NCBI RefSeq assembly: GCF_022045235.1
Contig: NW_027266275.1
Coordinates: 12,214,001 to 12,278,000, forward strand
DNA: 64,000 nucleotides
Direction of reading: 5' to 3'
DNA from: Haliotis cracherodii
Lineage: Eukaryota
Shown here one piece after another: positions 1-44,045 of this stretch. The stretch's first letter is position 1, and each line of letters starts with the position of its first letter. The position numbers and the translations under genes were made by a program. The notes under the pieces were generated by a model. The model searched no databases. It had not been told where the DNA came from and worked only from the letters and a program-made list of their open reading frames with translations.

Positions 1-1
1 G

Positions 2-1240
2 AAGGTAGAGATGGAAAACGAGAAACTACAAAATAGTTCAAGAATCACGGAGTTAAAAGTGCAAAATATTAAATCAATCTCTCAAACAGCTATAAACAAG
101 ATTAAAGAGAAAGAAACACAACTCTTGGATGAACTGAATCACATAACACAGACGCACGCCGGCCAACTCCGCTCAGGCGTGAAGCTTGACGAGATTGAGA
201 TGCAGATGTACAGACAACATTGTGAGTTCATTGACCAGGCCTTGGTATCGGACTGTGAGATGGACCTGTATGATGCGTATCAGGCCTGGGAGTTTGGGGC
301 TGTAGAGTTTGGGGATGTCAGGGACACAGACACAGCAGACACACGGAGAATAGATGACGTCAGGTTTACACCTGACACTGACAACGTCCAGCACATCCTA
401 GATGACCTACAGCTGGGGGAGATTGACGTCACATACCAGGATCAGGGCACATCTCCAGTGCGTGTTGACGTGATAGATGGGAGGATGGTGGGTAATGAGG
501 TGGAGCCTGATTTCAGTGGCGTCACAGTCCTTGTTGTAGATGGTATACAGACAGTTGTAGTCACTGACTTTAATAACAAGTGTGTGAAATCCTTCTACAC
601 CAGAAACAACTTGACATGCCACAGTAAACTTCCCCTGGATGCCTCTCCATGTGGTGTAACGCAGTTGAAGGAGAACCAGGTGATGGTTGCTGTCCCTGAC
701 TCCAGTCAGATTGTAACAGTAGAAGTGACCCCTGACCTGGTGCTGCTCTCAACAATCACAACAAGCAAGTGGTATGGCAGTCTTGCTGTTCTTAGTCCTT
801 CATCTCTAGCAGCAGGTACATATCACTGTGTTGACATCCTGGACATGGCAGGACACGTGCTGAGGTCAGTCACTACACTCTACAATGAGACACTGTTTAC
901 CCATCCTTACTACATGTGTGTCAACAACAAGGGTAACATACTCGTGTCTGACTGGGGGAAGCAGGCTGTGACATGTCTAACATCAGAGGGGGATGTATTG
1001 TGGAGATACGCCCCTACCGGAGACAGAGCACTCAGACCTTATGGTATCTCAACTACAGGCACAGGAAGCATCCTGCTTGTAGACAGGAACACCTACAAGG
1101 TGATACAGCTGACAGAGTCGGGGGAGTATGTCAGGGATGTCCTAATTTCAAAAGACGTATGTGATATATCCTGTGATAAATACGGATTCCTCTTTGTGTG
1201 TACAATCACAAAAGTGGAAAAGTATGTGTCAGTCTTATAG
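2..1240 (+). CDS. TRIM-like gene A1, 3' part of coding exon 2 (coiled coil + NHL-like beta-propeller); 5' end is outside the window
   Basis: ORF 11..1240 is open from base 2. The coiled coil is nearly identical to that in ORF 14439..16238. NHL-like blade motifs (PCGVT, PYYMCVNNKGNILVSD, PYGISTTGTGSILLVD). AATAAA at about 1356. Confidence 0.85.
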   Translation, partial: KVEMENEKLQNSSRITELKVQNIKSISQTAINKIKEKETQLLDELNHITQTHAGQLRSGVKLDEIEMQMYRQHCEFIDQALVSDCEMDLYDAYQAWEFGAVEFGDVRDTDTADTRRIDDVRFTPDTDNVQHILDDLQLGEIDVTYQDQGTSPVRVDVIDGRMVGNEVEPDFSGVTVLVVDGIQTVVVTDFNNKCVKSFYTRNNLTCHSKLPLDASPCGVTQLKENQVMVAVPDSSQIVTVEVTPDLVLLSTITTSKWYGSLAVLSPSSLAAGTYHCVDILDMAGHVLRSVTTLYNETLFTHPYYMCVNNKGNILVSDWGKQAVTCLTSEGDVLWRYAPTGDRALRPYGISTTGTGSILLVDRNTYKVIQLTESGEYVRDVLISKDVCDISCDKYGFLFVCTITKVEKYVSVL

Positions 1241-1961
1241 AAAACAGAAACTGAAGGTTTATTCCAGTGATGTGCATGGGGTTACTCTGGAAATAGTTAT
1301 GTGAAAATGGTGTAGAGAAAATAGCTCCAGTCAATGTATAGAACATTCAGTATCAAATAAAGCCTTCACCAAAACCTGGGTTGCCTTTTATTCACTCATT
1401 TGGTCACAAAAGGATTAAGATTACTTAACAATCAAAACAATGATATGCTATAAAGAAAGAGTGAGCGGTTATATTTTTACGACGATTTCGGCAATAACAT
1501 AGCCATAAAATGGACTTTACATGCTCCCTTGTCCGAGTGTAGAAAAACAGCAGTAGTGGTAATTAAGTGGGACAGTTTTTAATTCGATCATAATCAACAT
1601 CAATTTGTTGAAATCTAAAATACGCACGATGTGCGTGGATTCAACATTCTCCTCAAGATAAGATCCCATCTATTTTGTTCCATGATGAAATCCGCCGTTT
1701 GAACTGAAACACACACCATGATTGTGACAAGAAATCTACGAAAACCTTTTTGTTGATTTGGTAAGTAACCGGTGATTAAAGTTAACACCACAATACAAAC
1801 TGAGACAATAGGAAGTGGCACCGATCTGAATAGGAGGCGAAAGAAGTTGAAGAAATGTGATGACACTGAACCATCGAAGACATTCATCACTTTGGCCTTG
1901 CCTCCTTTAAGCACGCCGTGACATACCAGAAATACTGCTCAAAGTAGAGGTAGAAACAGTC

Positions 1962-2345
1962 TAATGTACGGATAATGCACAGATAATGTATGGATACTGT
2001 ACGGATAATGCGCGAATACTGAATGAATAAAAAACAGATAATATACGTATAATGTACGGATAATGTAATGTACAGATACTGTAATATTAATGTACGGATA
2101 AAGCACGGGTAATGTACGGATAAAGCACGGGTAATGTACGGATAAAGCACGGGTAATGTACGGATAAAGCACGGGTAATGTACGGATAAGGCAGGGGTAA
2201 TGTGCGGATAAGACATAGGTATTGTAGGATACTGAAGGGGAAAATTTACGGATACTGAACGTATAATGTACTGATTTTGCACGGGTAATGTAGTTTAATG
2301 CATGGGAAATGCACGGATAATGCACTGATACTGTACGGATAATTC
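1962..2345. repeat. Minisatellite, 11-bp subunit / 22-bp period (aatgtacggat aaagcacgggt)
   Basis: Direct inspection. Duplicate at about 25110-25493; short versions at about 11393-11460 and 34543-34610. Confidence 0.9.
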
Positions 2346-4600
2346 CACAATAACCGAACGCAATAACCGAACTGCACATGTGAATCTTACTGATAAAAGA
2401 CCTTTCAGAATTATTTTAGAGTTTCATTTTAGAGCATGGTATTCGCTGTGCCCTCTGCGCATGTTCGTGTCAACGAATCAGAATTCATTTGTGCGTATTA
2501 AAAATCATTTCCGTCTCCATCACACTGTCACTACAACCCGTTGTACTTTTGATTGGTCGTCAGGGAACTCCTTTACTGTCGCTTTGATGACTTTGGCCTC
2601 ACACAATCCCAGTCCCTTCTCTGTATTATAGTGAACACTTTCTTGTGAAAACATCTGACTGTGTACAAGCAGGCCACAACATGGACTGTGCGTTGAACTG
2701 TATTTTGATATGAATATTCGGTGTTGGTCTATATTAGAAGATTGACAATGTAATATTTAACGTTGTCATCACTCAATAATATTTATTTACAGTAGACATT
2801 CCATACAATGTTCCTATACAAAGTCTATATAATGGGGATTTCTAAGAAAGGCTACCTGGACTATTGTCACGATTTTATTTCCAAACTGAAACGAAGAGGA
2901 TAACCCAGTAACGCACTAAACTAAACTGGGAAATCGGTACATGATCACTTCTTGTACTGACATAAACGACATTACCTGCATACATGTCAACACATATTTG
3001 TACAAAAACGAAGTTGCAGAATATTTAACGATATAACAAAAACCCTGTTTATAGCGTGTCTAGTGTGCGTATATTGAAATGTGCCGATCTCTTACGTTGT
3101 TATCGGTATCATCCCAGATTCGATCCAGGAACCTACATGTACGTTTTCATCAGCTTTAATCGCTTTAGAATCACCACTAGTCGGGATATCGCAGTTGCCT
3201 CCCTTGTATGTCATGCGGAAGGGACAGGTTGGCACAGGTTAGCACAGGAGTGTACCTCGGCGAGATTTGGTTATTTCAAGGCCTCAAGGACGTACAATTA
3301 AATCTCACACAGGTCACATGAAGAACTAGTATACCTGTATATTCATCGATAGTGTCAACTTACATGAGGTATGTGTTTCTTAAATTATAGATTCTGGTTT
3401 AATTTAGTTTTGTCAACTCATGAGACTTCAAACGAAGAGAAACCGAAAGTAGGAATTGTTGGACCCAAAGTTATAATGAAATGTAAAATATATAGATGTA
3501 ACTTTCTTTTATTGTTATGAGTTTTATGTATCTGTGACATTCTGGTAAACAAAGCCATTTTTTTCGACTTGTAAAACTGACAAAATAAGGATATCTTGCA
3601 TGTTGGCGACTTGGTATCGAATACGAACGTACAGTTATCTTCCATGTATTGGGATTTCGGGGAGGGTGTGTGTGTGTATCTATTGACTATGAAGGAAGGA
3701 TGGTGTTAATATAATTTATTCATTTATACTGACTGTTGGTGCTCATTTTAAATTATTGTCGACAATGCCACACTTGCACGAGTATATTGGCATAAATTAA
3801 GCCTGCTCATACGCATTGTCACAATAATTCATATATACAGTATTAGTTTATCTCTTCAAGGTAAATCCTGTATTGTGTGGAAAGAACCAGCTTGTTCTTT
3901 TAGCTGAGCCAGTACGTCATTACGAAACTGAGTTTAACTATATTGAGGAAAAGGTACGTTTCTTAGACGCCTTGTTTGGCATGATAGCAATATATGAGGA
4001 ATAATGTGTTCCCAAAGCACTATACAGCTTTTGTAAAATCTTCAAGGTGATTTTAAAAGGATATTAAAGTCTTATCACAAGAGCGACTAAATTTGAGCGG
4101 ATGGTTACAATGTGGCTGACTGGCTGCTCGTTCCCTGACGACTTGACTCCAAGCTGTGGGTTTGCCTGGTCGACACTCGACATATACACTGTCCTTTTTG
4201 AACAACAAATTATATGTCAAACAGTAAATAGGGTTTTGTCAGCTGTTATGAAATAATTCAGTTGAGTTAACACGAAGAATAAATCCTATTGCGATTTACA
4301 GAGAATTTACTCCCAAATCCCAAGTACCCAACGCTTATCACAGGGCGACTATTTAAAGTTTGAACGGTGTGTTACAATGTGAGACCTGACTGACTGTGTC
4401 TCATTGTACCCTCGCGACGTGATTCGATGCTCATGATGTGAGCAGTTGGTTTGCCTGGACGACACTCCACACAATACTCATCACTATGATGAAGTTGACA
4501 TGTGATGTTGTTGCGGCATCAAAACAACATTGACTTCTCCGAGACAAACGTTTGATATCGAATAATAGACGTTTCAACATATTAAATGGTGCACTTAACA
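2300..4600 (+). promoter_or_regulatory. Conserved upstream block of TRIM genes (putative promoter and non-coding exons); paralogous to about 11390-13720, 25450-27750, 34540-41540 and a fragment at about 22900-23190
   Basis: Alignable between A and B genes. Contains donor-like catgag|gtatgt (about 3368 / 12501) and an acceptor/donor-bounded ~93-nt segment (about 3861-3953 / 12989-13081). RING exons start at ag|ATG, which implies upstream UTR exons. Confidence 0.5.
3439..3450 (+). promoter_or_regulatory. IRF-binding / ISRE-like motif GAAACCGAAAGT upstream of B1
   Basis: Exact match to the IRF consensus GAAA(G/C)(T/C)GAAA(G/C)(T/C). Confidence 0.55.
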
Positions 4601-4645
4601 TGTGAATTGTTTTGGTATTATATGTTTCTTTAAACAGTATTTCAT

Positions 4646-5140
4646 ATGTAACAAATGTTATATTTGGGATAACACTTTGTTAGTAAAGTACAGATTCTCG
4701 TACCTTTTTGGGTTTGAGTCCCGTCCGAGATTCCCACCTACCCTTGCCAGTGTGAAGCACCTAATCACCAGCACACAAAGTCAGCGATCTAACCCACTCA
4801 GCCACTGGGGCTCCCTCAAAAATGAAAGTCCGACGACTGGTTGTCTAGATCACGTACTTTGAGTACCCATCTGACATGTGTAAATTGGCACAGCTCCCAT
4901 GGCCGAAAGCTATGAATACACAATGCCATTTAGAAAGTGGTCAAATGTAACAAATATTATATTTGGGATAACACTTTCTCAGTAGGTACAGATTCTCGTA
5001 CCTTTGTGGGTTGAGTCCCATCCGGGATTCGAACCCACACTTGCCAGAGTGAGGCACCTAATCGCCAGCACACAAAGTCAGCGATCTAACCCACTCAGAC
5101 ACCGAGGCTTCCACAACAATGAAAGTCCGACAACAGGCAG
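4646..5140 (-). mobile_element. Two tandem tRNA-derived SINE-like units (about 4646-4850 and 4945-5140); duplicated at about 27800-28293
   Basis: Minus strand shows A-box-like TGGCTGAGTGG and B-box GGTTCGAATCC. The two units align at about 300-bp spacing. Confidence 0.6.
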
Positions 5141-6175
5141 TCTGTTTGAGCTCCGACGTCCATTATCAGGATATATACGGCAGCATGTTTCAGCCTGATT
5201 TCGACTCAGTTTGTCGGCAGTGTTGAACTTATACCCCTCTTGTATGCATGCATTCACATATTTGGAATAACAAGGTATACATGCCACTCGATTGTGTCTT
5301 CACATGTAGGTGAATATACCGTACTTTTGTAAAGTTAGAACCGTCAAGTAAGTTTTATAAATGTTGGTACACACTTTTGCAAACTGGAATTTGCATTTAT
5401 ACATTTACACGTATGTGAAAATATACAGATGTGTGCAAATGCACGTAGATTTGCGTGGGTTTCATGCGAATCACCATGTAGCCATATCAGATATTCATCG
5501 GAATAAGTTGTTTCTAATAGGAGCCTATGTTTGTTCGAATGCACTGGGTATAGGGAAGTAACTCGGTTTTAGTTGTGACGTCTGTCAGCTGTCAATACGG
5601 CTAGCCTGTACGCATGAATGCCGACAAGATAAATTCATTATCAACCGATCCATCGGTACATAAAAGCGACAAAGACCTCTCCACAGCCACAAGAGATCTC
5701 TTCCAAAAGCAAATACAATTCCGACTGTATCATGAGCATGAGTCTATGAAGCACTATAAAATACTGATGATACCAGTGTTCGCGAAAAGCTGAGAGTATC
5801 CTGCCCCACCGGTGGTATCCATTACAAATACATGCAAAGTCAAGTCAGTTGTTTACCCTAAAACACAGGAGAACATATGGTAAAGTCAAAAAAGGGAATT
5901 GCATCGGACATGTTTGTCACGGATGCGTCCAATTTGGAAATGTCCTCCGCATGTACACCATAAGACTTCTTGGAAGCTCTATTGAAGCCCTGAATGATGT
6001 AACCAGAGTCATTATAAAGAGGAAGGGTAAAAGTATATTTGCAGCTGTGTGTACATATTAAAACGATATATATATATTATGGTTGTAAAACGATACGAAT
6101 CAAGCTCAGTCATATCATTATTGTTTTGAAGAAAATGAAATGCATAAATCATTAAACTATGAATGCATTTAATAG

Positions 6176-7964
6176 ATGGCTACCCGGAACGAAAACAAAA
6201 TCAAGGATAATTTCCTGACGTGCTCCATCTGCTTCGAGACGTACACAGACCCCTGTACACTGACCTGCCACCACACCTTCTGTCAGAGATGTATCACCAA
6301 GTACATCCAAACCAGACCAGATTCTGTACAGTCCAAGACGATCCCCTGTGCCTGCTGTGGACAAGATACCATGGTCCCCCACCCCAGCAGGCCAGTGGAG
6401 GAGTGGGCGGGGCAGATCAAACCCAGCATCATTCTACAGAAGTTGACAAACAAACCAGGTAAAGTGGAAACGTTCTAAATGTTGAACCTATTTTATTATT
6501 TATATTAATACGTCTTGTTTGATTAAAACGTAGAATATAAAAATTAAATGTACTTAAAAGAATATTTGTTGATTTGAGAAATCTATATTACTTACCAAAG
6601 ATGTTTACAAAATATGCCATGAATAGTGAGTGAAAACAGGTATATAAAACATATTAGAATTTCAGAAGGCTGTTATGTTTAGACAATAACATGTATCAAC
6701 GAGAACAGAAATGTCTACCCCGTAAGTTACAGGTTGATTAACGTTGAGGCCTGGCATGTAAGTTGTAACTACTGTTTGATTTACTGGTTTGTTTACGTCT
6801 ATGCTGTTACATTCTGTCTGAGTATTAAACACTAAAGACATTTTATATTAACTGAAATAGATTTCAATTATCATGGGACGATACTCACATCATTCTATGT
6901 TTTCAGTGTTAACAAACAATTGCTGCACAATCTGTCAGCAACTAGGGGAGATAACTGCAGGAGTCTTGAGATGTCCTGAATGCGAAGTAGACCTCTGTGA
7001 AAGATGCGTGAAGATACATTGGGTGAGCCCTATGTCAAGTAACCATGACCTCTTTGACCTGCAAACCAGAGATAAGGAGGGAGAGTGTAAAAGCGACAAG
7101 CCGATTCCACAGAGGGAGACAGCTGACCACAATAACCAAGGTAAAGGCAATCAGAAGGCACCACTGCTGGTCAACACAATTGATACCTATCGAATCAGTG
7201 GCAAAATGTCCTTCAATATCCGTGACGTCGCAGTCCTGGTTGTAGACGGTGTACAGACAGTTGTAGTCACCGACGGGGACAATCACTGCATAACATCGTT
7301 CTACACCAGAAAAAAGACGCCACGTTTCAGTACGGGTCGTGTGAAAAAATCTCCATGGGGTGTAACACAGCTGAAAGAGAAGCAGGTACTGGTTGCTGTC
7401 CCCGAATCATGTGAAATTGTAACAGTGGGTGTCAGCCCTGGCCTGGTGCTGCTATCAACCATCACAACACGTACTGGGTACTACAGTCTCGCTGTTCTGA
7501 GTCCTTCATCTCTAGCAGCAAGTACAGACTATTGTGTTGATATCCTGGATATGTCGGGGCTCGTGTTGAGGTCAGTTAATGCATACAACAATATGCGACT
7601 ATTTACCTACCCCGACTACATATGTGTCAACAACAAGGGCAACATACTCGTGTCTGACTGGGGGGAGAAGTCTGTGACATGTCTAACATCAGAGGGGGAT
7701 GTTGTGTGGAGATACGCCCCTACCGGAGACAGAGCTCTCGGTGTTCCTCATGGAATTTCCACTGCCAGGACTGGAGACATACTTCTGGTGGACAGTAATT
7801 CCAACAAGGTCATACAACTGACAGAGACGGGAGAGTTTGTCAGAGACCTCCTCACGTCAGACGGTAACGTGTCTGGCCTGAAGAGTATTTTCTGTCATAC
7901 ACGCGAATCCTTCTTTATCTGTTGTAATGCTGAAGTGAAGGAGTACAAATGTAGTCGATACTAA
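6176..7964 (+). CDS. TRIM-like gene B1, join(6176..6458,6907..7964), 446 aa: RING + B-box1 + beta-propeller, no B-box2 or coiled coil
   Basis: C3HC4 RING (CSIC..CHHTFCQRC..CACC). ag|ATG at 6176, donor CCAG|GTAAAG after 6458, acceptor ttttcag|TG at 6907. The phase-1 junction restores the frame of ORF 6873..7964. Confidence 0.85.
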
Positions 7965-8629
7965 TTCGGTCGTGCTACAACGTGAGACCAAGACAACTGA
8001 CAAAAAACAAGGTTTAGTCGAGATCCAGTACCAAGTAGTATGATAAGTATCCGCTCAACAAACCAAGTCCTCAACAGGATTGTGGACGATAACAATAGTG
8101 ATTAGTGTCAGAGTATAAAACGAAAACTATTGAAACTCACAAGGTACATGTTCCATGTCACAACGTTTAGCTTACTAAAAATATATATACAATTACTCTC
8201 TGTAAAATAGTAGTATATGAAGCATAAATAAAGATGACACTACAATTCCGACCCAACCCATAATGGTATTGCAGTGTTGGAGGACTGTTGTGAGAGACAT
8301 GATGTTATTTCTTCAGGGCACGCAATTTTGTTGGGAAAGGAGAATCCGAACAATTTATTTTTTCACAATGCTTTTTTTTCAGGACAGACAGAGAACAATT
8401 TTTTGTGATAAAATCTGATAAATAATTACTTATTTAACATTTATTCAAATGGTTCAAGAATTTGCCTTCAAAATGCATCTTCTTTTTCTTTGTTTCTGAA
8501 TAACCATGTCGTTTTATTTGTCATAATGGGCTGCGAGGTCGTTATGCGTAATAACCACGTCATTGATAATTATTGGTTTTATACTATGTCCATGCACGCA
8601 AGTCGCAAATTGTTTGCCTGGCTTCATTA

Positions 8630-8810
8630 TCTGTATGTTATTTACCTGGGTTTATCATCAATGTAGTAGTTACCTGTATCCGTCATCTTTGTAGTATTTA
8701 CCTGTATCCATCTTCTATGTACTACCTATATTCACTATCTGTGTAGTATTTACCTGGCTTTGTCATATATGTAGTATGTGCCTAACTTCGTCATATATAT
8801 GTGAAAATGT
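8630..8810. repeat. Degenerate short tandem repeat (tatttacctg..tcatctatgtagta); copy at about 31785-31940
   Basis: Recurrent tacctg / tgtagta motifs at about 25-30 bp spacing. Confidence 0.55.
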
Positions 8811-9604
8811 AACATATGATATATTTTATAAATAAAGTGGACACAAATATTCGTACCAACCAATTGATATTCTTTGAGTGTTCATTCAGAGGTTTCATTT
8901 TCAAAAAAAAACATTTTAGCTCTTTTCATTAAATAGTTAGTAATCGTCAAGGTTTACGTGTTGTCCTCGTATAATTATGCAACATTTACCTGGCTTAATT
9001 GTGTATGTGTGTCTTATTTATCAAATGAGGCGTGTTGTCTTCTGGTGGAGACAGTGGCACAACGTTCATGCCTAACTGTGGTACTAATAGTTCGTGTATT
9101 TCCGGAACAACCGAATGAATGGTTACAGGCGCCGTCATGCTCACCATGTAACAGAATGGTAGATTTTGTAAACCTTTTAGCCTTTGTCATTCCAATATGT
9201 TGATTGTGTAATTGCCGTTAGGCATTTCTGTTCTCTTATTTTAATCATATATCATTCTTCAATGCCGTCCGAAAACATCTTGAAATAGCTGTCATTGGTT
9301 GTTATTGTATAACTGTCTCTGGTACTGCTGCTTCCTTCCATACACCTTTGCCACACCTGACGGTAATCGCACAACAGTGACAGGAATGGTGATACACACA
9401 AGCATGACATTGGTTTAGTGACAGCACTGAGTACTGCTTCAAAAATATTGTCCTTCTCCACTGAAAGTCATATGGTGTCAAGTATGTGTGAAGAGGGTAT
9501 TCGGAAAGATTTTATCAACATAATCTAGCAATCCAAGGATCAACATTATCATTGAAATTATTATTGAGATAACTCATAAGCGATCTTGTTCCATTGTGTG
9601 TATG

Positions 9605-9952
9605 GGGCGGTGGGGTGAAATGGGTTAACGTCTAGTTCAAGGTTTGTTCACCTATACAGCCACGAGCATTGTCCTGTGTGCATTAACTTGTCCAGATTTA
9701 TGTCGGTTTTAAAGTGCTAGCCCACTGAGATACCATGCCTCAGTTTAACATGTACACCACCATATTATATTCACTCCGAGCCAGCCAGTCCTTGATTTAA
9801 CCTCTTAATGTCACGCAGTTTAACCACCCCACTAAGACATATTAAATTAACCCCGAGGCAGCCACTCCTTTTTGTATGACGCGGAAGGGAATCGAACTAC
9901 CGACCTTTTGCTCTCCAAGCAGATGCTCTATTCACCAGACCACGGAGGCAGT
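9605..9952 (-). mobile_element. tRNA-derived SINE (V-SINE-like); copy at about 32733-33083
   Basis: Minus-strand tRNA-like head (gcctccgtggtctggtg..gttcgattcc) followed by cgtcatac and the gactggctggctcgg / cagtgggctagcact body. Confidence 0.65.
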
Positions 9953-10258
9953 TCAAGGCGTGTATACAATGAAGGACATAAGGGCGTGCATCTAAGGCAG
10001 TGAGGAGACATGTGTAGGCGTTCTGTATAAAAAGGCTTGGCTTGGTCTATTTGAAATTCTTATCAAGTTTGGTTTGCATTTGTTAACTGAAAGTTTCTTA
10101 TTCTTATCAGTGTACAATTCACATACGATAATACATAGTTAAACAGTTTGTCTTTCCTTCACACAAACACTTAATAGGTCTATACCGAAAGAACGAAATG
10201 TTGTTTCCTTTACTGATTGATTTCAGAATTGAAGATCGACTGCGCAGAACCATGACAA

Positions 10259-10356
10259 ATGAGGTGAGGTGAGGTGAAATTGGGCTTAACGTCACGTCCA
10301 AGATTATTGCACTTATATAGCGACGTGCATGCGTGCGCGTGTGCGTGTGCGCGTGC

Positions 10357-10389
<33 letters not shown>

Positions 10390-10627
10390 GCTGGCTACTT
10401 GTACTAGCCCGGACCGATGCCGATCTACAGTGCTAGCACACTGAGATACCATGCCGCAGTTTAACATGAATACCCCACTCAGACGCAGTATACTGACATC
10501 GAGCCGACCAGCCCTTGTTTTAGCCCCTTAATGCCGAGCGCCAGACAGGGAAACAACAAGTAACATCTTTTAATGTCTTTTGCTATGACGCGGCCGGTGT
10601 TCGAACCCCGGACCTTCCGCTCTCCGC
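10259..10627 (-). mobile_element. tRNA-derived V-SINE-like element with internal (GC/GT)n microsatellite and (TCACC)n tail; copy at about 33391-33778
   Basis: Minus strand reads ggttcgaacaccggccgcgtcatagcaaaagac..ttccctgtctggcgctcggcattaaggg, resembling the V-domain consensus (from memory). Confidence 0.7.
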
Positions 10628-26591: not shown

Positions 26592-26603
26592 GAAACCGAA
26601 AGT
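26592..26603 (+). promoter_or_regulatory. IRF-binding / ISRE-like motif upstream of B2
   Basis: GAAACCGAAAGT. Confidence 0.55.
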
Positions 26604-31033: not shown

Positions 31034-34000
31034 AGAGTATTTTCTGTCATACACGCGAATCCTTCTTTATCTGTTGTAATGCTGAAGTGAAGGAGTACAA
31101 ATGTAGTCAATACTAATTCGATCGTGCTACAAGAGAGATCAAGACAACGGACACAAAACCAGGTTTTGTCGAGATCCAGTACCAAGTAGTATGATAAGTA
31201 TCCGCTCAACAAACCAAGTCCTCAACAGGATTGTGGACGATAACAATAGTGATTAGTGTCAGAGTATAAAACGAAAACTATTGAAACTCACAAAGTACAT
31301 CTTCCATGTCACAACGTTTAGCTTACTAAATATATATATACAATTACTCTCTGTAAAATAGTAGTATATGAAGCATAAATAAAGATGACACTACAATTCC
31401 GACACAACCCATAATGGTATTGCAGTGTTGGAGGACTGTTGTGAGAGACATGATGTTATTTCTTCAGGGCATGCAATTTTGTTGGGAAAGGAGAATCCGA
31501 ACAATTTATTTTTTCACAATGCTTTTTTTTTCAGGACAGACCGAGAACAATTTTTTGTGATAAAATCTGATAAATAATTACTTCTTTAACATTTATTCAA
31601 ATGGTTCAAGAATTTGTCTTCAAAATGCATCTTCTTTTTCTTTGTTTCTGAATAACCATGTCGTTTTATTTGTCATAATAGGCTGCGAGGTCGTTATGCG
31701 TAATAACCACATCATTGATAATTATTGGTTTTATACTATGTCCATGCACGCAAGTCGCAAATTGTTTGCCTGGCTTCATTATCTGTATGTTATTTACCTG
31801 TGTTTATCATCTATGTAGTAGTTACCTGTATTCATCATCTTTGTAGTATTTACCTGTATCCATCTTCTGTGTACTACCTATATTCTCTATCTTACCTGGC
31901 TTTGTCATATATGTAGTATGTGTCTAACTTCGTCATATATATATATGTGAAAATGTGACATATGATATATTTTATAAATAAAGTGGACACAAATATTCGT
32001 ACCAACCATTTGATATTCTTTGAGTGTTCATTCAGACGTTTCATTTTCAAAAAAAACCATTTTAGCTCTTTTCATTAAATATTTAGTAATCGTCAAGGTT
32101 TACCTGTTGTCCTCGTATAATTATGCAACATTTACCTGGCTTAATTGTGTATGTGTGTCTCATTTATCAAATGAGGCGTGTTGTCTTCTGATGGAGACAG
32201 TGGCACAACGTTCATGTCTAATTGTGGTACTAATAGTTAGTGTATTTCCGGAACAACCGAATGAATGGTTACAGGCGCCGTCATGCTCACCATGTAACAG
32301 AATGGTAGATTTTGTAAAACCTTTTAGCCTTTGTCACTCCAATATGTTGATTGTGTAATTGCCGTTAGGCGTTTCCGTTTTCTTAATTTAATCATATATC
32401 TTTCTTCAATGAAATGGCTGTCACTGCATGTTATTGTATAACTGTCTCTGGTACTGCTGCTTCCTTCCATACACCTTTGCCACACCTGACGGTAATCGCA
32501 CAACAGTGACGTGAATGGTGACACACACACGCATGACATTGGTTTAGTGACAGCATTCAGTACTGCTTCAAAAATATTTTCCTTCTCCACTGAAAGTTAT
32601 ATAGTGTCAGGTGTGAGTGAAGAGGGTATTCGGCAAGATTTTATCAACATAATCTAGCAATCCAAGGATCAACATTATCATTGAAATTATTATTGAGATA
32701 ACTCATAAGCGATCTTGTTCCATTGTGTGTATGGGGCGGTGGGGTGAAATCGGGTTAACGTCTAGTTCAAGGTTTGTTCACCTATACAGCCACGAGCATT
32801 GTCCTGTGTCCATTAACTAGTCCAGATTTATGTTGGTTTTATAGTGCTAGCCCACTGAGGCTACCATGCCTCAGTTTAACATGTACACCACCATATTATA
32901 TTCACTCCGAGCCAGCCAGTCCTTGATTTAACCTCTTAATGTCACGCAGTTTAACCACCCCACTGAGACATATTAAATTAACCCCGAGGCAGCCACTCCT
33001 TTTTGTATGACGCGGAAGGGGATCGAACTACCGACCTTTCGCTCTCCAAGCAGATGCTCTACTCACCAGACCACGGAGGCAGTTCAAGGCGTGTATACAA
33101 TGAAGGACATAAGGGCGTGCATCTAAGGCAGTGAGGAGACATGTGTAGGCGTTCTGTATAAAAAGGCTTGGCTTGGTCTATTTGAAATTCTTATCAAGTT
33201 TGGTTTGCATTTGTTAACTGAAAGTTTCTTATTCTTATCAGTGTACAATTCACATATGATAATACATACTTAAACAGTTTGTCTTTCCTTCACACAAACA
33301 CTTAATAGGTCTATACCGAAAGGACGAAATGTTGTTTCCTTTACTGATTGATTTCAGAATTGAAGATCGACTGCACAGAACCATGACAAATGAGGTGAGG
33401 TGAGGTGAGGTGGAATTGGGCTTAACGTCACGTCCAAGATTATTGCACTTATATAGCGACGTGCATGCGTGCGCGTGTGCGAGTGCGCGTGCGCATGTGC
33501 GTGTGTGTGTGTGTGTGTGTGGCTTGCTACTTGTACTAGTCCGGACCGATGCCGATCTACAGTGCTAGCTCACTGAGATACCATGCCACAGTTTAACATG
33601 AATACCCCACTCAGACACAGTATACTGACTCCGAGCCGACCAGTCCTTGTTTTAGCCCCTTAATGCCGAGCGCCAAACAGGGTAACAACAAGTACCATCT
33701 TTTAATGTCTTTTGGTATGGCGCGGCCGGTGTTCGAACCCCGGACCTTCCACGCTCCGCTTATAGTGTGCTGGGCGTATTTCCAACGCTTTCGATAACCA
33801 GTGAAGGTTCTATAAATTATTTACATCGTTGAACATGCATGACCGGTTTAAGCTCTAAATCCGTATAAATCTATGTTTCGATTTTAAAATGTTCAGATGT
33901 CAAGCCATTTGTTGGTCTGTTGTGATATTATAGCCAATAAATTCAAAATGTCAACGCAAGAAAAAATACTTGAATAGTCTTGATTATCTGCCGAAACAGA

Positions 34001-35988
34001 TTCCACAGGGCGTAAGAGGCAAAATAGTGACCCATAGTATTGGTAACATCGTGCATCATGTTGACAAGCTGGCTCTGAAACTTTGATATCGTTAAGGGTT
34101 TCAACACAATCCTAAACCTGTAAAAGTTATTCAATATCCCACACACTTCTGTATTCTGTGCATATTCAAAGCGAAACCGCATTGTGCACATACTTCCATT
34201 CCATGTTTAAACTTAATGATCGCTGTGTGACGAATATTCACTTTTATACTATGTTATCTGTCTAGCTATTTGTTATCATGTAGTAATTACTTTAAACACG
34301 GTTGTACAATTATTTTTGATATATTACTCCAACGCCAGGAATCAATGAGTCTCGACTTTATGGCGAATATACCCTCATTTGGGGTAAAAGACAAAATAAG
34401 AGTGACAATTACATGAATGAATCACTGCAAATCAGTGATGACACAAGGTGCTCACGAAAAGGCAACCTGGACCTGCAGGTTTGGTACAAGCTCCGATTAA
34501 AGGGACTTCGTTTTAAGAGTATTTGGGAGTGAAGTCGTGGTTAATGTACGGATAATATAGGGATTACGTACGGATAATGCACGGTGAACGCACGGATAAT
34601 GCACAATTACTGTAAGAATGATGCCACGCAACGCAATAACCGAACAGCACAGGTGAATCTTACTGATGAAAGCCATTTACAGAATCATTTTAGAGCATGG
34701 TATTCGCTGTGCCCTCTGCGCATGTTCGTGTCAACGAATCAGGATTCATTCGTACGAACTAAAAATGTCAGTATACAAAAGAGATCAAATCCTTTCCGTC
34801 TCCACGATACTGTTTCCACACACACCCCGTTGTACTTGTGAACGGTAACTTTTACTGCCGCTTTGATGACTTTGGCCTCACACAATCCCAGTCCCTACTC
34901 CTCTCCATACTATGCAATGCCACATACCCAGACATATATACATACAACATAACACCAATATTTACAATGGCCCGGTCGCAGTGTCGACACACGGCAGTTT
35001 ATTAACAGCCAACTCCAACTCCTCTCATGAACATATCTACACTCCCATAATACATCATGATATAGGGAACTGTTGCCCGACACGTAATCCAGAGATCAAA
35101 AACAACATTTAAGAGAAAATTGCTCTCGACCATGTTCTCCCAACGAAGTCAACATTCCCTTTCTGGGGAGTTTACAGAATATCTATTTGATGTACATAAA
35201 CCTTATGAGGTATACAGTGTTATGACTTAAAATGAGCATGTTAGCAAGGTATACTGACTTCCGCCAATTACATAATGGAATATACATTCATTACACTCGT
35301 ACTATAAAAGGCTCGCCAGCCTACTCCATCACCGATTATACATTAAGGCCATAATTCTTGCACGTATTATAATGACTCATCTGCCCTATCCATAACGGAA
35401 TATACATTTACATCATATATTCCATGAGGGTATTATGACGGCTCGCCAGCCTAACTTCCAAGACTGACTGGATTACAAATAACTTTTTCACGTATTATGA
35501 CGACTCATAATGGGGTGTCAAGGTACATATATAAACCAACCCGATAGGGGCGGAACTGCTCAATGAAATTTCCCACACTTCACCTCTTCCCCGATCGCAC
35601 AATCCTTCTTGTCAGAATTGAAATTCTGCAAACAGAAACATACATAAATATTTTGTTCAATCATACATATTAATAATGAATTACAATAACTTATGTTCAG
35701 TGTTACTGCCGTGCTGACAAGCGAGAGAGACGAGCTACTTTCCACTCCCCTTATTTATACCCGTAACATACCCAGGCTAATTATCTCCCTTAGCCATTGC
35801 ATACCGCTAAGGAGAAAGCAGTTTCTTTCTTATTCATAATGGACTCAACCGAGAGAAACATCATTTCTCCTGTCCATACTATGCAATGCCACATACCCAG
35901 ACATATATACATACAACATAACACCAATATTTACAATGGCCAGGTCGCAGTGTCGACACGGGCAGAGACTCAAAGAAAGTCTATAGCC

Positions 35989-40420: not shown

Positions 40421-40432
40421 GAAACCGAAAGT
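40421..40432 (+). promoter_or_regulatory. IRF-binding / ISRE-like motif upstream of A4
   Basis: GAAACCGAAAGT. Confidence 0.55.
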
Positions 40433-41760
40433 AGGAATTGTTGGACTCAAATTAAAATACATTGATGTAATTCTCTTTTATTGTTTTATGTTTAATGTAT
40501 ATCTGATGTTCTGGTGAACAACGTTACTTGTTGATGTGTAAAACGGACACAATAAAGATAAGCATCAGACTTAGTCTCGAATACTAACGTTCAATTACCT
40601 CCCTTGTAATATGTTTTCCAATTTATGTAAAGGAAAGCTTGGTGTTAACATAATTTATTTATTTATTTATACTAACTGTTGGTAGTTTTTAAAACTTTAT
40701 AGGAAACACGTGCGCATTTCAAATAAGGCGGATAATGTCACAGCTGCGAGAGTTTAATTTGGCTTCAATTAAGCCTGACCTCATATTATCACAATAATTC
40801 ATATATTCAGTTTTAATTCATCACTGCAGGTAAATCTTGTATTGTACGGAAAGAACAAGCTTGTTCTTATAGCAGAGTCAGTAATTCATTACGATAATGA
40901 TTTCAACTATAATGAGAGAAAGGTTTAGTTCAAATACAAGGATAAACAAATATATAGATCTAGACCCATGTTTCGGAAAAGCTTTATTTGGCGTTATATC
41001 AATATATGTATTCCTATAGTACTATGGAAGGGTCAATATAGACATACATTTATATCTTCAAGTTGATTTGAAAAGAATATTAAAGTCTGATTTACTGAGA
41101 GACTATCCCACTTGTGGCTGAATATATATCTCAAGTAACCAACGCTTGTCACAAATGTGACTCAATTTGAACAGTTTCTTACAATGTGTGATTGTACCCT
41201 GACCTCTTGACTCAATGTTTGTCATACCAGCAGCTGTTGGGTTGCCTGGTGGACACTCGACATACTCACTGTCACTTTTGGAACAAGGAATTATATGTGA
41301 TGTGCCAAACAGTAAACGGATTTCTTCCACTTTTATGAAATAATGCAGTTGATTTTATATGAAGAATAAACCCTATTACGATGGTAGCTGCTGATGGTTT
41401 GAGTGGTCGAACCTGGACATACTACAGATCACTATGATGCAGTTGACATGTGATGTTGATGGTGAAGAAACTTCATTGAGACAAACTACACATTCGACAG
41501 TCAATAACAGATGTCTCAATATATTTAATGACGCACTCAACACGTGAATGAATTTGGATATGTGCCACTTTGAACAGTATTTCAGTTATGTCAGCTTGGT
41601 GCGGAAGGTAAGTCCCACGTGGCTTTCAACAAGACATTTTCAAGATGTGCCAGCCAAAATACACATTGCCCCATTACAGAGACCTAAGAACTCCACCAGA
41701 AAAAATATATTTTGAAAATTTGAAAAATGATTTATGTGACCTTCAATTCTGGTTTTTCAG

Positions 41761-44045
41761 ATGGCGACATCCCAGAATGAGAAAGTGATGGAATTCCTCA
41801 CCTGTGTGATCTGCCAGGAACTGTACACAGACCCGTGTACACTGACGTGTGATCACACATTCTGCAGAAAATGTGTCACCAAGTACATACAAACCAGACC
41901 AGATGCTGTACAGTCAAAGACGATACCATGTGCCTTCTGTCGACAAGATACCAAGGTCCCCCACCCCAGCAGGCCAGTGGAGGAGTGGGCGGGGCAGATC
42001 AAACCCAGCATCATTATACAGGGGCTGATTGACACCCTAGGGACTGAGGGTGGTGTACCAGGTTAAGTTCAACCAGAAGTAACATTCATATGGATCAGTT
42101 AATCATGTTCATTGAAAGATAAATCTATGACAAAAAGATCTTAAAACGTATTAATCAGAAATAATGTCAATCCAGTTTGATGAATTATTTGGTGGAAGGT
42201 TAGCCAAGTGAACAACGTAAAGGTACAACCAGTTGTAATATTTAAGTTGATTTAATCACCTGTGTTTATGATATGGTATTTATTCATGAGAAATTGAAAC
42301 TTGAAATAGTTCATCAAGTTGGATCGGTTATTGAACTTTAAATAAAGACTGTTTACATGCTTAGCATTCCCATATTGGTTTCTTTTAGAAACAATACAAT
42401 CGTTTTTCTGTTCACAGAGACGTCAAGCACCTACTGCATGATCTGTCAGCAACTAGGGGAGACAACTCCAGGTGCCTTGTGGTGTCCTGAGTGTGAAGTG
42501 GTCCTCTGTGACAGATGTGTGAAGACACACCGGGTGAGTCCTACGTCACAGAACCATGACCTGTGTGACCTGTCATCTAGGTCAAAGGGCAGACGGAGGG
42601 TCAAGTGTACAGAGCACAAGAGTAACAATGTAGAGTTCCACTGTAAAGACTGTCAGAAGGCTGCTTGTCAGACATGTTATATCACCTACCACAGAGCTTG
42701 TAAAACTGTCGTCACCATTGACTCAATGAAGCCAGAGATGGAGGCAGCACTGCTGGAGAAGAGATTTGACATGGGGAAGAGACTGAAGGTGAGGTCGAAG
42801 AAAGTAGAGCTGAAAAATAAGAAACTCAACACTATTTTTAGAGCTAAAGAGTCAGCTGTACAACATATTAGGTCAATATGTCAGACAGCTATAAACAAGA
42901 TTAAACAGAAAGAAACACAACTCTTGGATGAATTGAATCACATTACACAGACGTACACCGGCCAACTCCGCTCTGGTGTGAAACTTGAAGAGATTGAGAT
43001 GCAGATGTACAGACAACATTGTGAGTTCATTGACCAGGCCTTGGTATCGGACTGTGAGATGGACCTGTATGACGCGTATCAGGCCTGGGAGTCGGGGGCT
43101 GTAGAGATGGGGGATGTCAGGGACACAGATACAGCAGACACCTGGAGAATAGATAACATCAGGTTTACATCAAACGCTGAGCATGTCCAGCACATCATAT
43201 ATAACCTACATCTGGGAAAGATTCACGTCACATATCAGGATCAGAAGAAATGTCTGCTGTCGCCTGTGCTAGTTGGAATTACAGACGGGAGGATGGCGGG
43301 TGATGAGAATGAGCCTGATCTACGCGACGTCACAGTCCTGGTTGTAGACGGTATACAGACTGCTGTGGTTACCGACATGAAGAATGAGTGTGTAAAATCT
43401 TTCTACACAACAAACAACCAGCGATGTCAAAGTAAACTTCCCCTGGGTGACCTTCCATGTGGTGTAACACAGTTGAAGGAGAAACAGGTGATGGTTGCTG
43501 TCCCTGGATCCCGTCAGATTGTAACAGTAGAAGTAACCCCTGACCTGGCCCTGCTCTCGTCCTTCACAACAAATAAGGTGTATTACAGTCTCGCTGTTCT
43601 GAATCCCTCCTGTCTAGCAGCAGGTGGATACGGCGTTGTTGATATCCTGGACATGGCGGGGCACGTGCTGAGGACACTCACTAAACGCAACAAGACCCTG
43701 TTTACCTTCCCCTACTACATGTGTGTCAACAGCAAGGGCAACATACTCGTGTCTGACGAGAGGAAGAAGTCTGTGACATGTCTAACTACAGAAGGCGATG
43801 TTGTGTTCAAATACGCACCTACCGGAGACAGAGCGCTCAGCTTGCCTCGTGGCATCGCAACTACCAGCAAAGGAGACACTCTGCTTGTAGACAGGAGCAC
43901 CAATGAAATGATTCAGCTGACAGAGTCGGGGGAGTTAGTTGGAGATTTTCTCAAGTCAAAAGACGTGTGTGATGTATTCTGTGATAAATACGGATTCTTC
44001 TTTCTGTGTACAAAAACGGATGTGAGAGAGTATATGTTAGTCTGA
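41761..44045 (+). CDS. TRIM-like gene A4, join(41761..42061,42418..44045), 642 aa: RING, two B-boxes, coiled coil, beta-propeller
   Basis: Same splice signals and phase as A2. ORFs 41761..42066 and 42357..44045 are intact. Confidence 0.9.

What the first reader, a model, noticed from the sequence alone, without database searches (positions are those of the whole stretch)
440..44045. Candidate system: tandem TRIM-like array with a constant scaffold and a hypervariable beta-propeller face
Seen: across A1, A2, A4 and B1 the blade cores are nearly invariant (GVTQLKE.QV.VAVP, VDILDM.G.VLR, CVN.KGNILVSD, YAPTGDRAL, IQLTE.GE). Specific positions change radically or carry indels: the residue before each blade-start G or hydrophobic position (C/H/C/W; Y/W/Y/D; Y/S/R/H), the residues after the conserved D (FN/CR/MK/GD; WG/WE/ER/WG; RN/C-/RS/SN), and loops GTYHC/GGQDCDSYGI/GGYGV/STDYC. 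Between A2 and A4 the propeller looks more divergent than the upstream non-coding DNA. Known: in NHL propellers (Brat, LIN-41/TRIM71) the equivalent positions form the ligand-binding top face, and antiviral TRIMs diversify their C-terminal sensor domain. Inference: a rapidly diversifying pathogen- or RNA-sensing E3 ligase repertoire. TRIM expansions are known in molluscs; I cannot confirm this subfamily is undescribed.
Basis: partly seen in the sequence, partly recalled or inferred. Interest (0 to 1): 0.85.

Follow-up and report, generated by a model that had tools for sequence, protein, structure and literature searches.

The report
Abalone TRIM-NHL array with diversifying propeller
This stretch of the black abalone genome holds a tandem family of ubiquitin-ligase genes whose front halves are kept alike by copying between neighbours. 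One face of their C-terminal propeller changes unusually fast, as expected of a recognition repertoire, although the target is unknown.

Summary
The window (Haliotis cracherodii, contig C12) holds six tandem TRIM genes on the + strand.

- **Complete genes:** A2 and A4 (RING, B-box1, B-box2, coiled coil, NHL).
- **Short form:** B1 has RING, B-box1 and NHL only.
- **Damaged copies:** A1 has an intact main exon but a broken RING exon. A3 (propeller deleted) and B2 (early stop) are pseudogenes.
the RING lies on a separate upstream exon, and the first ~48 residues of the long ORFs are intron read-through.

The "constant scaffold, variable propeller" contrast also appears at synonymous sites and in flanking non-coding DNA. 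It therefore mainly reflects mosaic ancestry: the 5' module is homogenised within the cluster, with breakpoints at the coiled-coil/NHL border.

Within the propeller, replacements concentrate on the D-A and B-C loops, which share one face:

- omega is about 1.2 on those loops, 0.2-0.4 on the opposite face and 0.6-0.7 in strands.
- Sites hypervariable in one clade show omega 2.4-3.6 in the other clades.

Contigs that look like RNA carry the predicted splice junction. A pathogen-sensing role is untested, and RNA binding looks unlikely. An earlier scan note (s1-823403) describes a similar cluster elsewhere in this genome.

The parts
1..1240 (+). A1: 3' part of the main exon (coiled coil and NHL propeller). 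The exon begins upstream of the window, and the full copy is L005.
   Evidence: The ORF appears. The full-length 540-residue exon is in L005. Only a broken RING remnant lies upstream.
6176..6458 (+). B1 exon 1: RING finger.
   Evidence: tblastn match. Pfam zf-C3HC4 scores 34.1 bits against a cut-off of 21. The donor reads G|GTAAAGT.
6907..7964 (+). B1 exon 2: B-box1, a short linker and the NHL propeller. B-box2 and the coiled coil are absent.
   Evidence: Alignment, Pfam, acceptor ttttcag| at 6906. Four near-full copies at 97-100% identity lie in the cluster.
12343..12501 (+). Possible 5' UTR exon of A2 (tentative).
   Evidence: This is the only upstream bin with depth in runs X1 and X2. X1 has imprecise joints from 12467 and 12501 to 13931 and 13934.
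13933..14233 (+). A2 exon 1: start codon and C3HC4 RING.
   Evidence: 100% match to the N-terminus of P0001. Pfam zf-C3HC4 scores 35.7 bits.
14234..14583 (+). A2 intron: 350 nt, GT..AG, phase 1.
   Evidence: Sequence. A joint that skips 350 nt with GT..AG ends is present in runs X2 and X3, and depth in the intron bin is near zero.
14584..15398 (+). A2 exon 2, first part: B-box1, B-box2 and coiled coil (the 'scaffold').
   Evidence: Pfam PF22586 and PF00643. The AlphaFold2 model shows two small zinc-finger folds followed by a 110-residue helix.
15399..16238 (+). A2 exon 2, second part: six-bladed NHL propeller and stop codon. Candidate selected codons start at 15477, 15486, 15546, 15549, 15627, 15675, 15747, 15813, 15816, 15894, 15900, 16029, 16080, 16161 and 16206.
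   Evidence: AlphaFold2 pLDDT 94.7, Foldseek, site analysis.
22433..22543 (+). A3: broken RING remnant of 37 residues. The frame then runs into unrelated sequence and a stop.
23655..24730 (+). A3: truncated main exon (pseudogene). It is a copy of A1 with an 887-bp deletion of the propeller, and the deletion junction is at 24666. The start coordinate is approximate.
   Evidence: Self-comparison: 1-630 matches 24037-24666 at 98.7%, and 1518 onward resumes at 24666. Alignment.
29329..29611 (+). B2 exon 1: RING, a copy of the B1 exon.
   Evidence: tblastn.
30060..31033 (+). B2 exon 2 (likely pseudogene). An early stop removes the last blade, and there are replacements in conserved core positions. 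The start coordinate is approximate.
   Evidence: Alignment. Match covers residues 1-317 of 345.
41761..42061 (+). A4 exon 1: RING.
   Evidence: tblastn at 92% identity. Donor sequence.
42418..44045 (+). A4 exon 2: B-box1, B-box2, coiled coil and NHL propeller.
   Evidence: ORF, Pfam, acceptor at 42417. Near-identical paralogue L008 lies 161 kb away.
1518..11763 (+). Segmental duplication, copy 1: the A1 3' flank, B1 and the spacer.
   Evidence: 97.4% identical over 10.3 kb to 24666-34900.
24666..34900 (+). Segmental duplication, copy 2: the A3 3' flank, B2 and the spacer.

Best explanation
**What it is.**
- The region is part of a tandem cluster of about 280 kb on contig C12 (12.20-12.48 Mb) of the black abalone genome.
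- The genes are canonical TRIM genes: RING, B-box1, B-box2, coiled coil and a six-bladed NHL propeller. No filamin domain is present.
- Each gene has a RING exon, a phase-1 intron of about 350 nt, and one large exon.

**How the array evolves (shown).**
- It grows by segmental duplication and loses copies by deletion and stop codons.
- Gene conversion or unequal crossing-over keeps the 5' module nearly uniform within the cluster. That module runs from the upstream DNA through the coiled coil.
- Exchange tracts tend to end at the coiled-coil/NHL border, so older and more diverse propeller modules persist behind a shared scaffold.
- Within the propeller, replacements accumulate preferentially at one or two positions per blade in the D-A and B-C loops, which ring one face.
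- The rates there exceed the silent rate and recur at the same sites in independent clades. This is the signature of diversifying selection on a binding surface.

**Inferred mechanism.**
- The propeller face recognises variable ligands, more likely proteins than RNA.
- The coiled coil dimerises the protein, and the RING ubiquitinates what is bound or signals.
- A role in defence against pathogens is the most likely biological setting but is not shown.
For: **Identity and architecture.**
- A2 is 100% identical to an annotated H. cracherodii protein named 'TRIM56-like', which has a RING.
- The RING exons were located and confirmed.
- The model of the scaffold shows a 110-residue helix after the B-boxes.

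**Family size.** The genome has at least 76 matches to A2 and at least 117 to the B1 propeller. Both are lower bounds.

**Mosaic ancestry.**
- Within the cluster, dS is 0.04-0.19 in the scaffold and up to 0.42 in the propeller, while omega is similar in both.
- The scaffold tree is a tight star. The propeller tree has three deep lineages.
- Maximum chi-squared breakpoints cluster at codon columns 241-296, with the mode at the TYQD border.
- Between A2 and A4, the 3' non-coding flank is 70% identical and the upstream DNA 93-95%.
- Between clusters, the B-box/coiled-coil part is the most diverged module (dS 0.80), against 0.27 for the RING and 0.38 for the propeller.

**No propeller-specific hypermutation.** In the recent pairs L008-L009 and L001-L002, propeller dS is lower than scaffold dS.

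**Selection on one face.**
- Entropy is higher in top loops than in bottom loops or strands (p about 1e-4).
- Class omega values are: top 1.24 or 1.21, bottom 0.22 or 0.37, strands 0.61 or 0.71.
- In eleven independent sister pairs, the top loops have 193 replacement and 47 silent changes. Fisher tests against the other classes give p from 2e-4 to 3e-6.
- Fifteen sites have posterior above 0.9 for beta greater than alpha. Thirteen of them lie within one residue of a top loop (p = 3e-5), and every blade contributes.
- Cross-validated omega on trees is 2.40 (p = 0.0012) and 3.28 (p = 2e-6).
- The tree-free version gives omega 3.62 (p = 5e-4).
- The mixture-model test gives LRT 394 for the propeller and 8.3 for the scaffold control.

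**Expression.**
- In runs X2 and X3, contigs cover only the exons and hold the GT..AG junction.
- Many contigs leave the reference exactly at two hypervariable loops, at 15821 and 16025.
Against: - As a class, the top loops are not significantly above omega = 1 (LRT p = 0.08; binomial p = 0.24).
- No single site survives Bonferroni correction. The best is residue 168, with p = 7e-4.
- In the window's own clade, the tree-free cross-validated test gives omega 1.29, which is not significant.
- Recombination is evidently frequent and can inflate tree-based tests.
- My codon-model code fixes branch lengths and uses a parameter grid. It is not codeml or HyPhy.
- Several copies are decaying, so some of the change is relaxed constraint.
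- The RNA status of the runs is a guess by the tool, contigs can cross-map between paralogues, and the run organisms are coded.
- No data bear on ligand, ligase activity or immune induction.
Confidence: 0.62

Rival explanations
1. Relaxed constraint only. The top loops are structurally unimportant and drift at about the neutral rate in a redundant, partly decaying gene family, with no adaptive diversification.
For: - Class-level omega of the top loops is 1.15-1.24 and not significantly above 1.
- No site passes multiple-testing correction.
- A3 and B2 are pseudogenes, and at least eight broken copies lie in the cluster.
- Omega is rather high everywhere, at 0.4-0.7.
Against: - Sites chosen in one clade have omega 2.4-3.6 in the others, significantly above 1. 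One of those tests uses no tree.
- Recent pairs have 11-25 replacement changes against 0.5-1.5 silent changes in the top loops.
- Part of the top face (the APTGDRAL block) and the whole bottom face are strongly conserved. The loops are therefore not simply free to vary.
- The candidate sites occupy equivalent positions in all six blades.
Confidence: 0.2
2. Recombination artefact. Short conversion tracts from distant paralogues bring clusters of differences into the loops. These mimic recurrent replacement on a single assumed tree, so the selection signal is spurious.
For: - Gene conversion and module exchange are demonstrably frequent.
- Further breakpoints lie inside the propeller, at codon columns 478-524.
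- Tests of the M2a type are known to give false positives under recombination.
Against: - Imported tracts carry silent changes as well, yet silent divergence in the top loops is no higher than in strands or bottom loops.
- Sister-pair counts that use no tree give the same contrast.
- The scaffold, which recombines at least as much, gives LRT 8.3 against 394 for the propeller under the same procedure.
Confidence: 0.08
3. The family is a diversifying recognition repertoire, but not for pathogens. Possible roles are endogenous RNA or protein regulation (as for LIN-41 and Brat), control of transposable elements, or reproductive or self/non-self recognition.
For: - The nearest solved folds are developmental RNA regulators.
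- The array is full of retroelements.
- No challenge or tissue data are available.
- Abalone reproductive proteins are known for rapid evolution (PMC9022041 is listed; I did not read it).
Against: - The variable face is not uniformly basic, which argues against an RNA-binding surface of the Brat or LIN-41 type.
- Tandem, fast-turnover TRIM arrays with selected C-terminal loops are otherwise known from antiviral TRIMs (PMC2657112, PMC3845644 and PMC3228819 are listed).
- TRIM genes are among the loci associated with herpesvirus resistance in oysters (PMC9437489).
Confidence: 0.1

Closest known systems
Positively selected antiviral TRIM arrays of vertebrates (TRIM5/TRIM22 cluster, fish finTRIM/btr)
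   Same: [quoted passage not shown]
- Lineage-specific tandem expansion with many pseudogenes.
- Replacement changes concentrated in surface loops of the C-terminal recognition domain.

PMC2657112, PMC3845644 and PMC3228819 were seen as titles and abstracts.
   Different: - The recognition domain here is a six-bladed NHL propeller, not B30.2/SPRY.
- The host is a gastropod.
- No antiviral activity or induction is known.
- The sharp homogenised-scaffold/old-propeller mosaic is a feature I did not find described in the papers I searched.
TRIM-NHL proteins (TRIM2, TRIM3, TRIM32, TRIM71/LIN-41, Brat, Mei-P26, Thin, Wech)
   Same: - Same domain order.
- The propeller model matches their solved NHL domains with TM-scores of 0.72-0.79, and there is weak but significant sequence similarity.
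- In Brat and LIN-41, the ligand binds the face that carries the D-A and B-C loops. This rests on my own knowledge of those structures and was not tested here.
   Different: - Those are single-copy, slowly evolving developmental regulators.
- Here no filamin domain was found.
- There are at least 76-117 copies in the genome.
- The binding face is hypervariable and not uniformly basic.
TRIM56 (the automatic name given to A2)
   Same: RING, B-box, coiled coil and an NHL-like C-terminal region. It is an antiviral E3 ligase in mammals (PMC13236048, abstract seen).
   Different: The name comes from automatic annotation. No orthology was shown, and neighbouring paralogues are variously named TRIM2-, TRIM3-, TRIM71-, wech- or lin-41-like.
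Expanded TRIM genes of bivalves linked to herpesvirus resistance loci
   Same: Mollusc TRIM genes, ten of which are among the candidate loci for survival of OsHV-1 infection in Pacific oyster (PMC9437489).
   Different: That study does not describe domain-level evolution or propeller-face variation. The relationship to this abalone clade was not tested.

Membership tests
TRIM / RBCC family | N-terminal RING finger (C3HC4) | tested here: met
   Exon 1 of A2, A4, B1 and B2 matches Pfam zf-C3HC4 at 34-36 bits against a cut-off of 21. All eight zinc ligands are visible. The feature is not met in A1 and A3, which have only a 37-residue remnant followed by a stop.
TRIM / RBCC family | One or two B-box zinc fingers after the RING | tested here: met
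   PF22586 (B-box1-like) and PF00643 (B-box2) match A2, A3 and A4. The Cys and His ligands are invariant across 84 relatives. B1 and B2 have B-box1 only.
TRIM / RBCC family | Long coiled coil after the B-boxes | tested here: met
   The AlphaFold2 model has one helix spanning residues 100-209 with pLDDT 90-98, followed by shorter helices. This is a prediction only, and dimerisation was not tested. The feature is absent from the B type.
TRIM-NHL subgroup | C-terminal six-bladed NHL beta-propeller | tested here: met
   Pfam NHL. The model has 24 strands in six blades with pLDDT 94.7. The best fold matches are NHL domains of Thin, TRIM2, Brat and TRIM71.
TRIM-NHL subgroup of the TRIM2/3/71 type | Filamin/Ig domain between the coiled coil and the NHL domain | tested here: not met
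   Pfam gives no filamin hit at E up to 0.1. Too few residues lie between the helical region and the first propeller strand.
RNA-binding TRIM-NHL (Brat / LIN-41 type) | Conserved, positively charged ligand-binding face | tested here: inconclusive
   The net charge of the D-A and B-C loop residues ranges from -11 to +4 among 27 paralogues, and these residues are the most variable. This counts loop residues only; no surface electrostatics were computed.
Positively selected recognition TRIMs (TRIM5 / finTRIM-like behaviour) | Lineage-specific tandem expansion with rapid turnover | tested here: met
   The genome has at least 76-117 copies in clusters. The window holds a 10-kb duplication at 97.4% identity and two pseudogenes. 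Only one of nine close paralogues has a clear H. rufescens counterpart among the proteins found.
Positively selected recognition TRIMs (TRIM5 / finTRIM-like behaviour) | Omega above 1 concentrated in surface loops of the C-terminal domain | tested here: met
   Cross-validated omega is 2.40, 3.28 and 3.62, with p from 0.0012 to 2e-6. Thirteen of 15 candidate sites lie at the top loops. Caveats: the code is my own, recombination is frequent, and one reciprocal test was not significant.
Positively selected recognition TRIMs (TRIM5 / finTRIM-like behaviour) | B30.2/SPRY recognition domain | tested here: not met
   The C-terminal domain is NHL, and Pfam gives no SPRY or PRY hit.
Positively selected recognition TRIMs (TRIM5 / finTRIM-like behaviour) | Antiviral activity, or induction by infection | not testable with these tools
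   Only coded runs of guessed type were available. No challenge data were found.
RING E3 ubiquitin ligases | Ubiquitin-transfer activity with an E2 enzyme | not testable with these tools
   This needs biochemistry. The RING exon is under purifying selection, with omega 0.22-0.33.

The most novel reading that the evidence does not exclude
The array is a combinatorial innate receptor system. Selection keeps the coiled-coil module identical within a cluster and different between clusters. Neighbouring paralogues with different propellers could then form heterodimers with each other, and with RING-less or coiled-coil-less siblings (A1, B type) that act as regulators or decoys. Conversion tracts are stopped at the coiled-coil/NHL border because homogenised propellers are selected against. 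This would multiply recognition specificities beyond the gene count.
Probability: 0.15. Interest if true: 0.8.

Novelty: new variant of a known kind. Interest (0 to 1): 0.55.

Why it matters
Diversifying TRIM repertoires are textbook examples of host-virus arms races in vertebrates, where the variable part is the SPRY domain. This array would show the same evolutionary logic built on an NHL propeller in a mollusc. One hypervariable position recurs per blade loop, around one face.

It would also show a clear division of labour. A homogenised effector and dimerisation module sits in front of a reservoir of old, diverse recognition modules. That gives a concrete set of about 15 codons and a handful of genes to test for ligand specificity.

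Black abalone is an endangered species whose decline is driven by disease (my own knowledge). The result also warns that "coding more divergent than non-coding" can arise from mosaic ancestry alone.

Tried and rejected
- **Ancestral-state counting.** I did no ancestral reconstruction by any other route. I used likelihoods that sum over ancestors, and sister-pair counts instead.
- **H. rufescens coding DNA.** Only protein trees were possible.
- **Site-by-site test.** No site survives Bonferroni correction, so I make no claim for any single codon.
- **Propeller-specific hypermutation.** Rejected as the cause of the high propeller dS, because recent pairs have lower dS in the propeller than in the scaffold.
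- **RING-less TRIM-like genes.** This was my first reading. I rejected it once the upstream RING exon was found.
- **RNA sensing of the Brat or LIN-41 type.** Not supported by loop charge.
- **Literature.** Seven searches and six papers opened found no description of this abalone family or of NHL-face diversification in molluscs. Most 'TRIM' hits in mollusc papers were trimming software.
- **Model coordinates.** They are not available to scripts, so solvent exposure and a true 3D mapping were not computed.
- **Joined transcript.** The exons were analysed separately by reference.

Full report
**What is there**

The window is G000:C12:12214001-12278000 of a 1.18-Gb genome. The translation of the 14439-16238 ORF is 100% identical over its matched part to an annotated Haliotis cracherodii protein. 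That protein is P0001, 651 residues, named 'E3 ubiquitin-protein ligase TRIM56-like'. All other strong matches are Haliotis proteins with automatic TRIM2, TRIM3, TRIM71, wech or lin-41-like names.

Six related ORFs lie on the + strand:

| Gene | ORF coordinates |
|---|---|
| A1 | 11-1240 |
| B1 | 6873-7964 |
| A2 | 14439-16238 |
| A3 | 23510-24730 |
| B2 | 30026-31033 |
| A4 | 42357-44045 |

Pfam finds a B-box1-like domain, B-box2 and NHL repeats.

**Gene structure**

P0001 begins with 100 residues that the long ORF lacks. They map to separate upstream exons:

- 13933-14232 for A2;
- 41761-42060 for A4;
- 6176-6460 for B1;
- 29329-29613 for B2.

Each of these is a C3HC4 RING that scores above Pfam's threshold.

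For A2 the donor reads G|GTTAAGT and the acceptor CACAG|AG. This gives exon 1 at 13933-14233, a 350-nt phase-1 intron at 14234-14583, and exon 2 at 14584-16238. The corresponding maps are:

- A4: exon 1 41761-42061, exon 2 42418-44045;
- B1: exon 1 6176-6458, exon 2 6907-7964.

The first ~48 residues of the long ORFs are therefore intron read-through.

An AlphaFold2 model of the A2 B-box region shows two small zinc-finger folds followed by one 110-residue helix (pLDDT 90-98). This is the usual TRIM coiled-coil element. The propeller model has 24 strands in six blades, with pLDDT 94.7. It matches the solved NHL domains of Thin, TRIM2, Brat, TRIM3 and TRIM71 with TM-scores of 0.72-0.79. No filamin domain was found.

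I analysed the exons separately by reference and built no joined transcript model.

**State of the copies**

- A self-comparison shows that 1518-11763 equals 24666-34900 at 97.4% identity. It also shows that A3 is a copy of A1 (98.7%) with an 887-bp deletion that removes the propeller.
- B2 is a copy of B1 with an early stop and with replacements in otherwise invariant core positions.
- A1, A3 and one further copy (L017) share a RING remnant of 37 residues that runs into a stop. A1 therefore has an intact main exon but no intact RING exon within reach.
- The B type lacks B-box2 and the coiled coil. It exists as four near-full copies at 97-100% identity, plus fragments, all inside this cluster.
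- The cluster spans C12 12.20-12.48 Mb. It holds at least nine intact A-type genes and several broken ones.
- Genome-wide there are at least 76 matches to A2 and 117 to the B1 propeller. Both counts are lower bounds.

**Why the scaffold is constant**

Among nine close paralogues the step between scaffold and propeller appears at synonymous sites as well. For L001 versus L005, dS is 0.042 in the scaffold and 0.322 in the propeller, while omega is similar in the two parts. Five further results point the same way:

- **Trees.** The scaffold tree is a tight star that lies far from the other clusters. The propeller tree splits the same genes into three deep lineages that do not form a supported clade.
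- **Breakpoints.** Maximum chi-squared breakpoints for pairs of paralogues cluster at codon columns 241-296, with the mode exactly at the TYQD border.
- **A2 versus A4 identity.**

| Segment | Identity |
|---|---|
| Upstream DNA | 93% |
| Possible 5' UTR exon | 95% |
| First intron | 94.5% |
| RING exon | 93% |
| Second intron | 91% |
| B-box/coiled coil | 91% |
| Propeller | 80% |
| 3' non-coding flank | 70% |

- **Between clusters.** The order reverses. The B-box/coiled-coil part is the most diverged module (dS 0.80), against 0.27 for the RING and 0.38 for the propeller.
- **Recent pairs.** L008-L009 and L001-L002 have lower dS in the propeller than in the scaffold, which excludes a propeller-specific mutation process.

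The simplest reading is concerted evolution of a 5' module within each cluster, with exchange tracts ending near the domain border. It is confounded as evidence for selection.

In protein trees that include three other Haliotis species, only the L008/L009 lineage (which includes A4) has a clear H. rufescens counterpart, at a distance of about 0.03-0.06 in both modules. The other propellers lie at least 0.35 from the nearest H. rufescens propeller, while the scaffolds intermingle at 0.03-0.1. This comparison is limited to the proteins returned by one search.

**Is one face hypervariable, and is it selected?**

From the DSSP string of the model I assigned the four strands of each blade using the NHL repeat register. 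The N-terminal strand closes blade 6. I then classed the loops as D-A plus B-C or as A-B plus C-D. By propeller topology the two sets lie on opposite faces. By the usual convention the first set is the 'top', which is the ligand-binding face in Brat and LIN-41. That last point rests on my own knowledge and was not tested here.

*Class-level results*

- Entropy in the top loops exceeds that of bottom loops and strands, with p about 1e-4.
- Omega by class:

| Site class | Nei-Gojobori, close clade | Codon-model likelihood, 27 sequences (26 paralogues + B1) |
|---|---|---|
| Top loops | 1.24 | 1.21 |
| Bottom loops | 0.22 | 0.37 |
| Strands | 0.61 | 0.71 |
| Scaffold | 0.59 | not fitted |

- In the likelihood fit, the top-loop value is not significantly above 1 (p = 0.08).
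- Recent pairs have top-loop omega of 4.6-7.5.
- Eleven phylogenetically independent sister pairs give 193 replacement and 47 silent changes in the top loops, or omega 1.15. This is not above 1 by itself. The replacement/silent ratio is nevertheless higher than in bottom loops, strands or scaffold (Fisher p from 2e-4 to 3e-6).

*Site-level results*

- A grid version of a site-by-site test finds 15 sites with posterior above 0.9 for beta greater than alpha: residues 27, 30, 50, 51, 77, 93, 117, 139, 140, 166, 168, 211, 228, 255 and 270 of the propeller.
- Eleven of the 15 lie in top loops and 13 lie within one residue of a top loop (p = 3e-5). Every blade contributes a D-A position, and five of the six blades contribute a B-C position.
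- No single site passes Bonferroni correction.
- A mixture-model test of the M1a/M2a kind gives LRT 394, with omega 4 in 12% of sites. The same procedure on the scaffold gives LRT 8.3 and no site above 0.95.

*Cross-validation, to avoid circular site choice*

| Sites picked in | Tested in | Method | Omega | p (omega > 1) |
|---|---|---|---|---|
| Two distant clades | Close clade | Tree | 2.40 | 0.0012 |
| Close clade | Two distant clades | Tree | 3.28 | 2e-6 |
| Close clade | Seven sister pairs of the distant clades | No tree | 3.62 | 5e-4 |
| Two distant clades | Four sister pairs of the close clade | No tree | 1.29 | not significant |

In the last test the picked sites still differ from the remaining sites (p = 0.02).

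I conclude that recurrent diversifying selection at a small set of positions on one face is well supported for the family. For the window's own clade the support is moderate.

**Expression**

No run is on record as RNA. Two runs guessed to be RNA (X2, X3) nevertheless cover only the exon bins, with zero or near-zero depth upstream and in the intron. Both hold contigs that skip 350 nt with GT..AG ends at the predicted intron. A fourth run (X15) covers every bin and behaves as genomic DNA.

Many contigs leave the A2 reference exactly at 15821 and 16025, next to hypervariable residues 139/140 and 211. This is what several expressed paralogues with different loops on shared cores would give. A few contigs with two or three mismatches lie in the A2-specific first blades.

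Contigs can cross-map between paralogues, and the run organisms are coded. This evidence therefore shows that the family is transcribed and spliced as modelled. It says nothing about level, tissue or induction.

**Function**

- **Shown:** the domain architecture, the tandem and mosaic evolution, purifying selection on the RING (omega 0.22-0.33) and on the bottom face, and elevated replacement on the other face.
- **Inferred:** the variable face binds diverse ligands, the coiled coil dimerises the protein, and the RING ubiquitinates or signals.

The net charge of the variable loops ranges from -11 to +4 among paralogues. This argues against a conserved basic RNA-binding face and favours protein or other ligands. 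A defence role is the most likely setting, by analogy with vertebrate TRIM arrays and because TRIM genes are among the herpesvirus-resistance loci in oyster (PMC9437489). Nothing here tests that role.

**Novelty**

Seven literature searches and six opened papers found no description of this abalone family or of NHL-face diversification in a mollusc TRIM array. The genes themselves are annotated in public records.

I rate it a new variant of a known kind. It follows the logic of positively selected TRIM repertoires, with an NHL propeller in place of SPRY and a marked homogenised-scaffold/old-propeller mosaic.

Other first-stage notes of this scan touch the same theme. On this window they cover the B type and the sharp switch at TYQD. 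On another piece of this genome they describe complete TRIM-NHLs paired with module-deficient siblings that share near-identical coiled coils.

**Limits**

- The codon-model code is my own. It uses a GY94-type model with F3x4 frequencies, fixed branch lengths and a parameter grid.

Noticed in passing
window 44323-61075: A tandem LTR retrotransposon. Two internal regions (44323-52320 and 52171-60168) are 99.4% identical and share three ~920-bp LTRs at 44660-45583, 52507-53431 and 60165-61075. The ORFs carry a gag-like (weak PNMA) domain, reverse transcriptase, RNase H and integrase. I described it only and built no consensus.
   Followed up: partly
window 35730-39617: A ~400-bp direct repeat (35730-36133 and 39227-39617, 93% identical) flanks ORFs on the minus strand (37364-37906 and 38310-39026) that have no Pfam hit. 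This is probably another LTR-type element. The homology of the A4 upstream region to A2 begins at 39623, immediately after it.
   Followed up: partly
window 21229-21698: A short tandem repeat array with a period of roughly 48-50 bp and copies ~90% alike, in the spacer upstream of A3.
   Followed up: no
window 2296-3740, 11426-12842, 25719-26893, 39623-40608: An upstream segment of about 1.0-1.5 kb recurs before both A-type and B-type genes at 77-79% identity. It includes the place of the possible 5' UTR exon of A2. It may be a shared promoter and leader module that is older than the recent duplications.
   Followed up: no
window 14913-15062 (A2) versus the matching part of A4: A local patch in the coiled coil is only 81% identical between A2 and A4, within an otherwise 91-97% identical scaffold. 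The A4/L008 lineage has a different run of about 20 residues there.
   Followed up: no
L003:1066-1356: The RING exon of paralogue L003 has a three-codon deletion, and Ser replaces the last zinc-binding Cys. Its main exon is intact, so it may be a RING-dead member.
   Followed up: no
L001-L004, codon columns 478-524 of the main exon: Within the youngest sub-clade, breakpoints fall inside the propeller before the last one or two blades. This suggests exchange of partial propellers as well as whole ones.
   Followed up: partly
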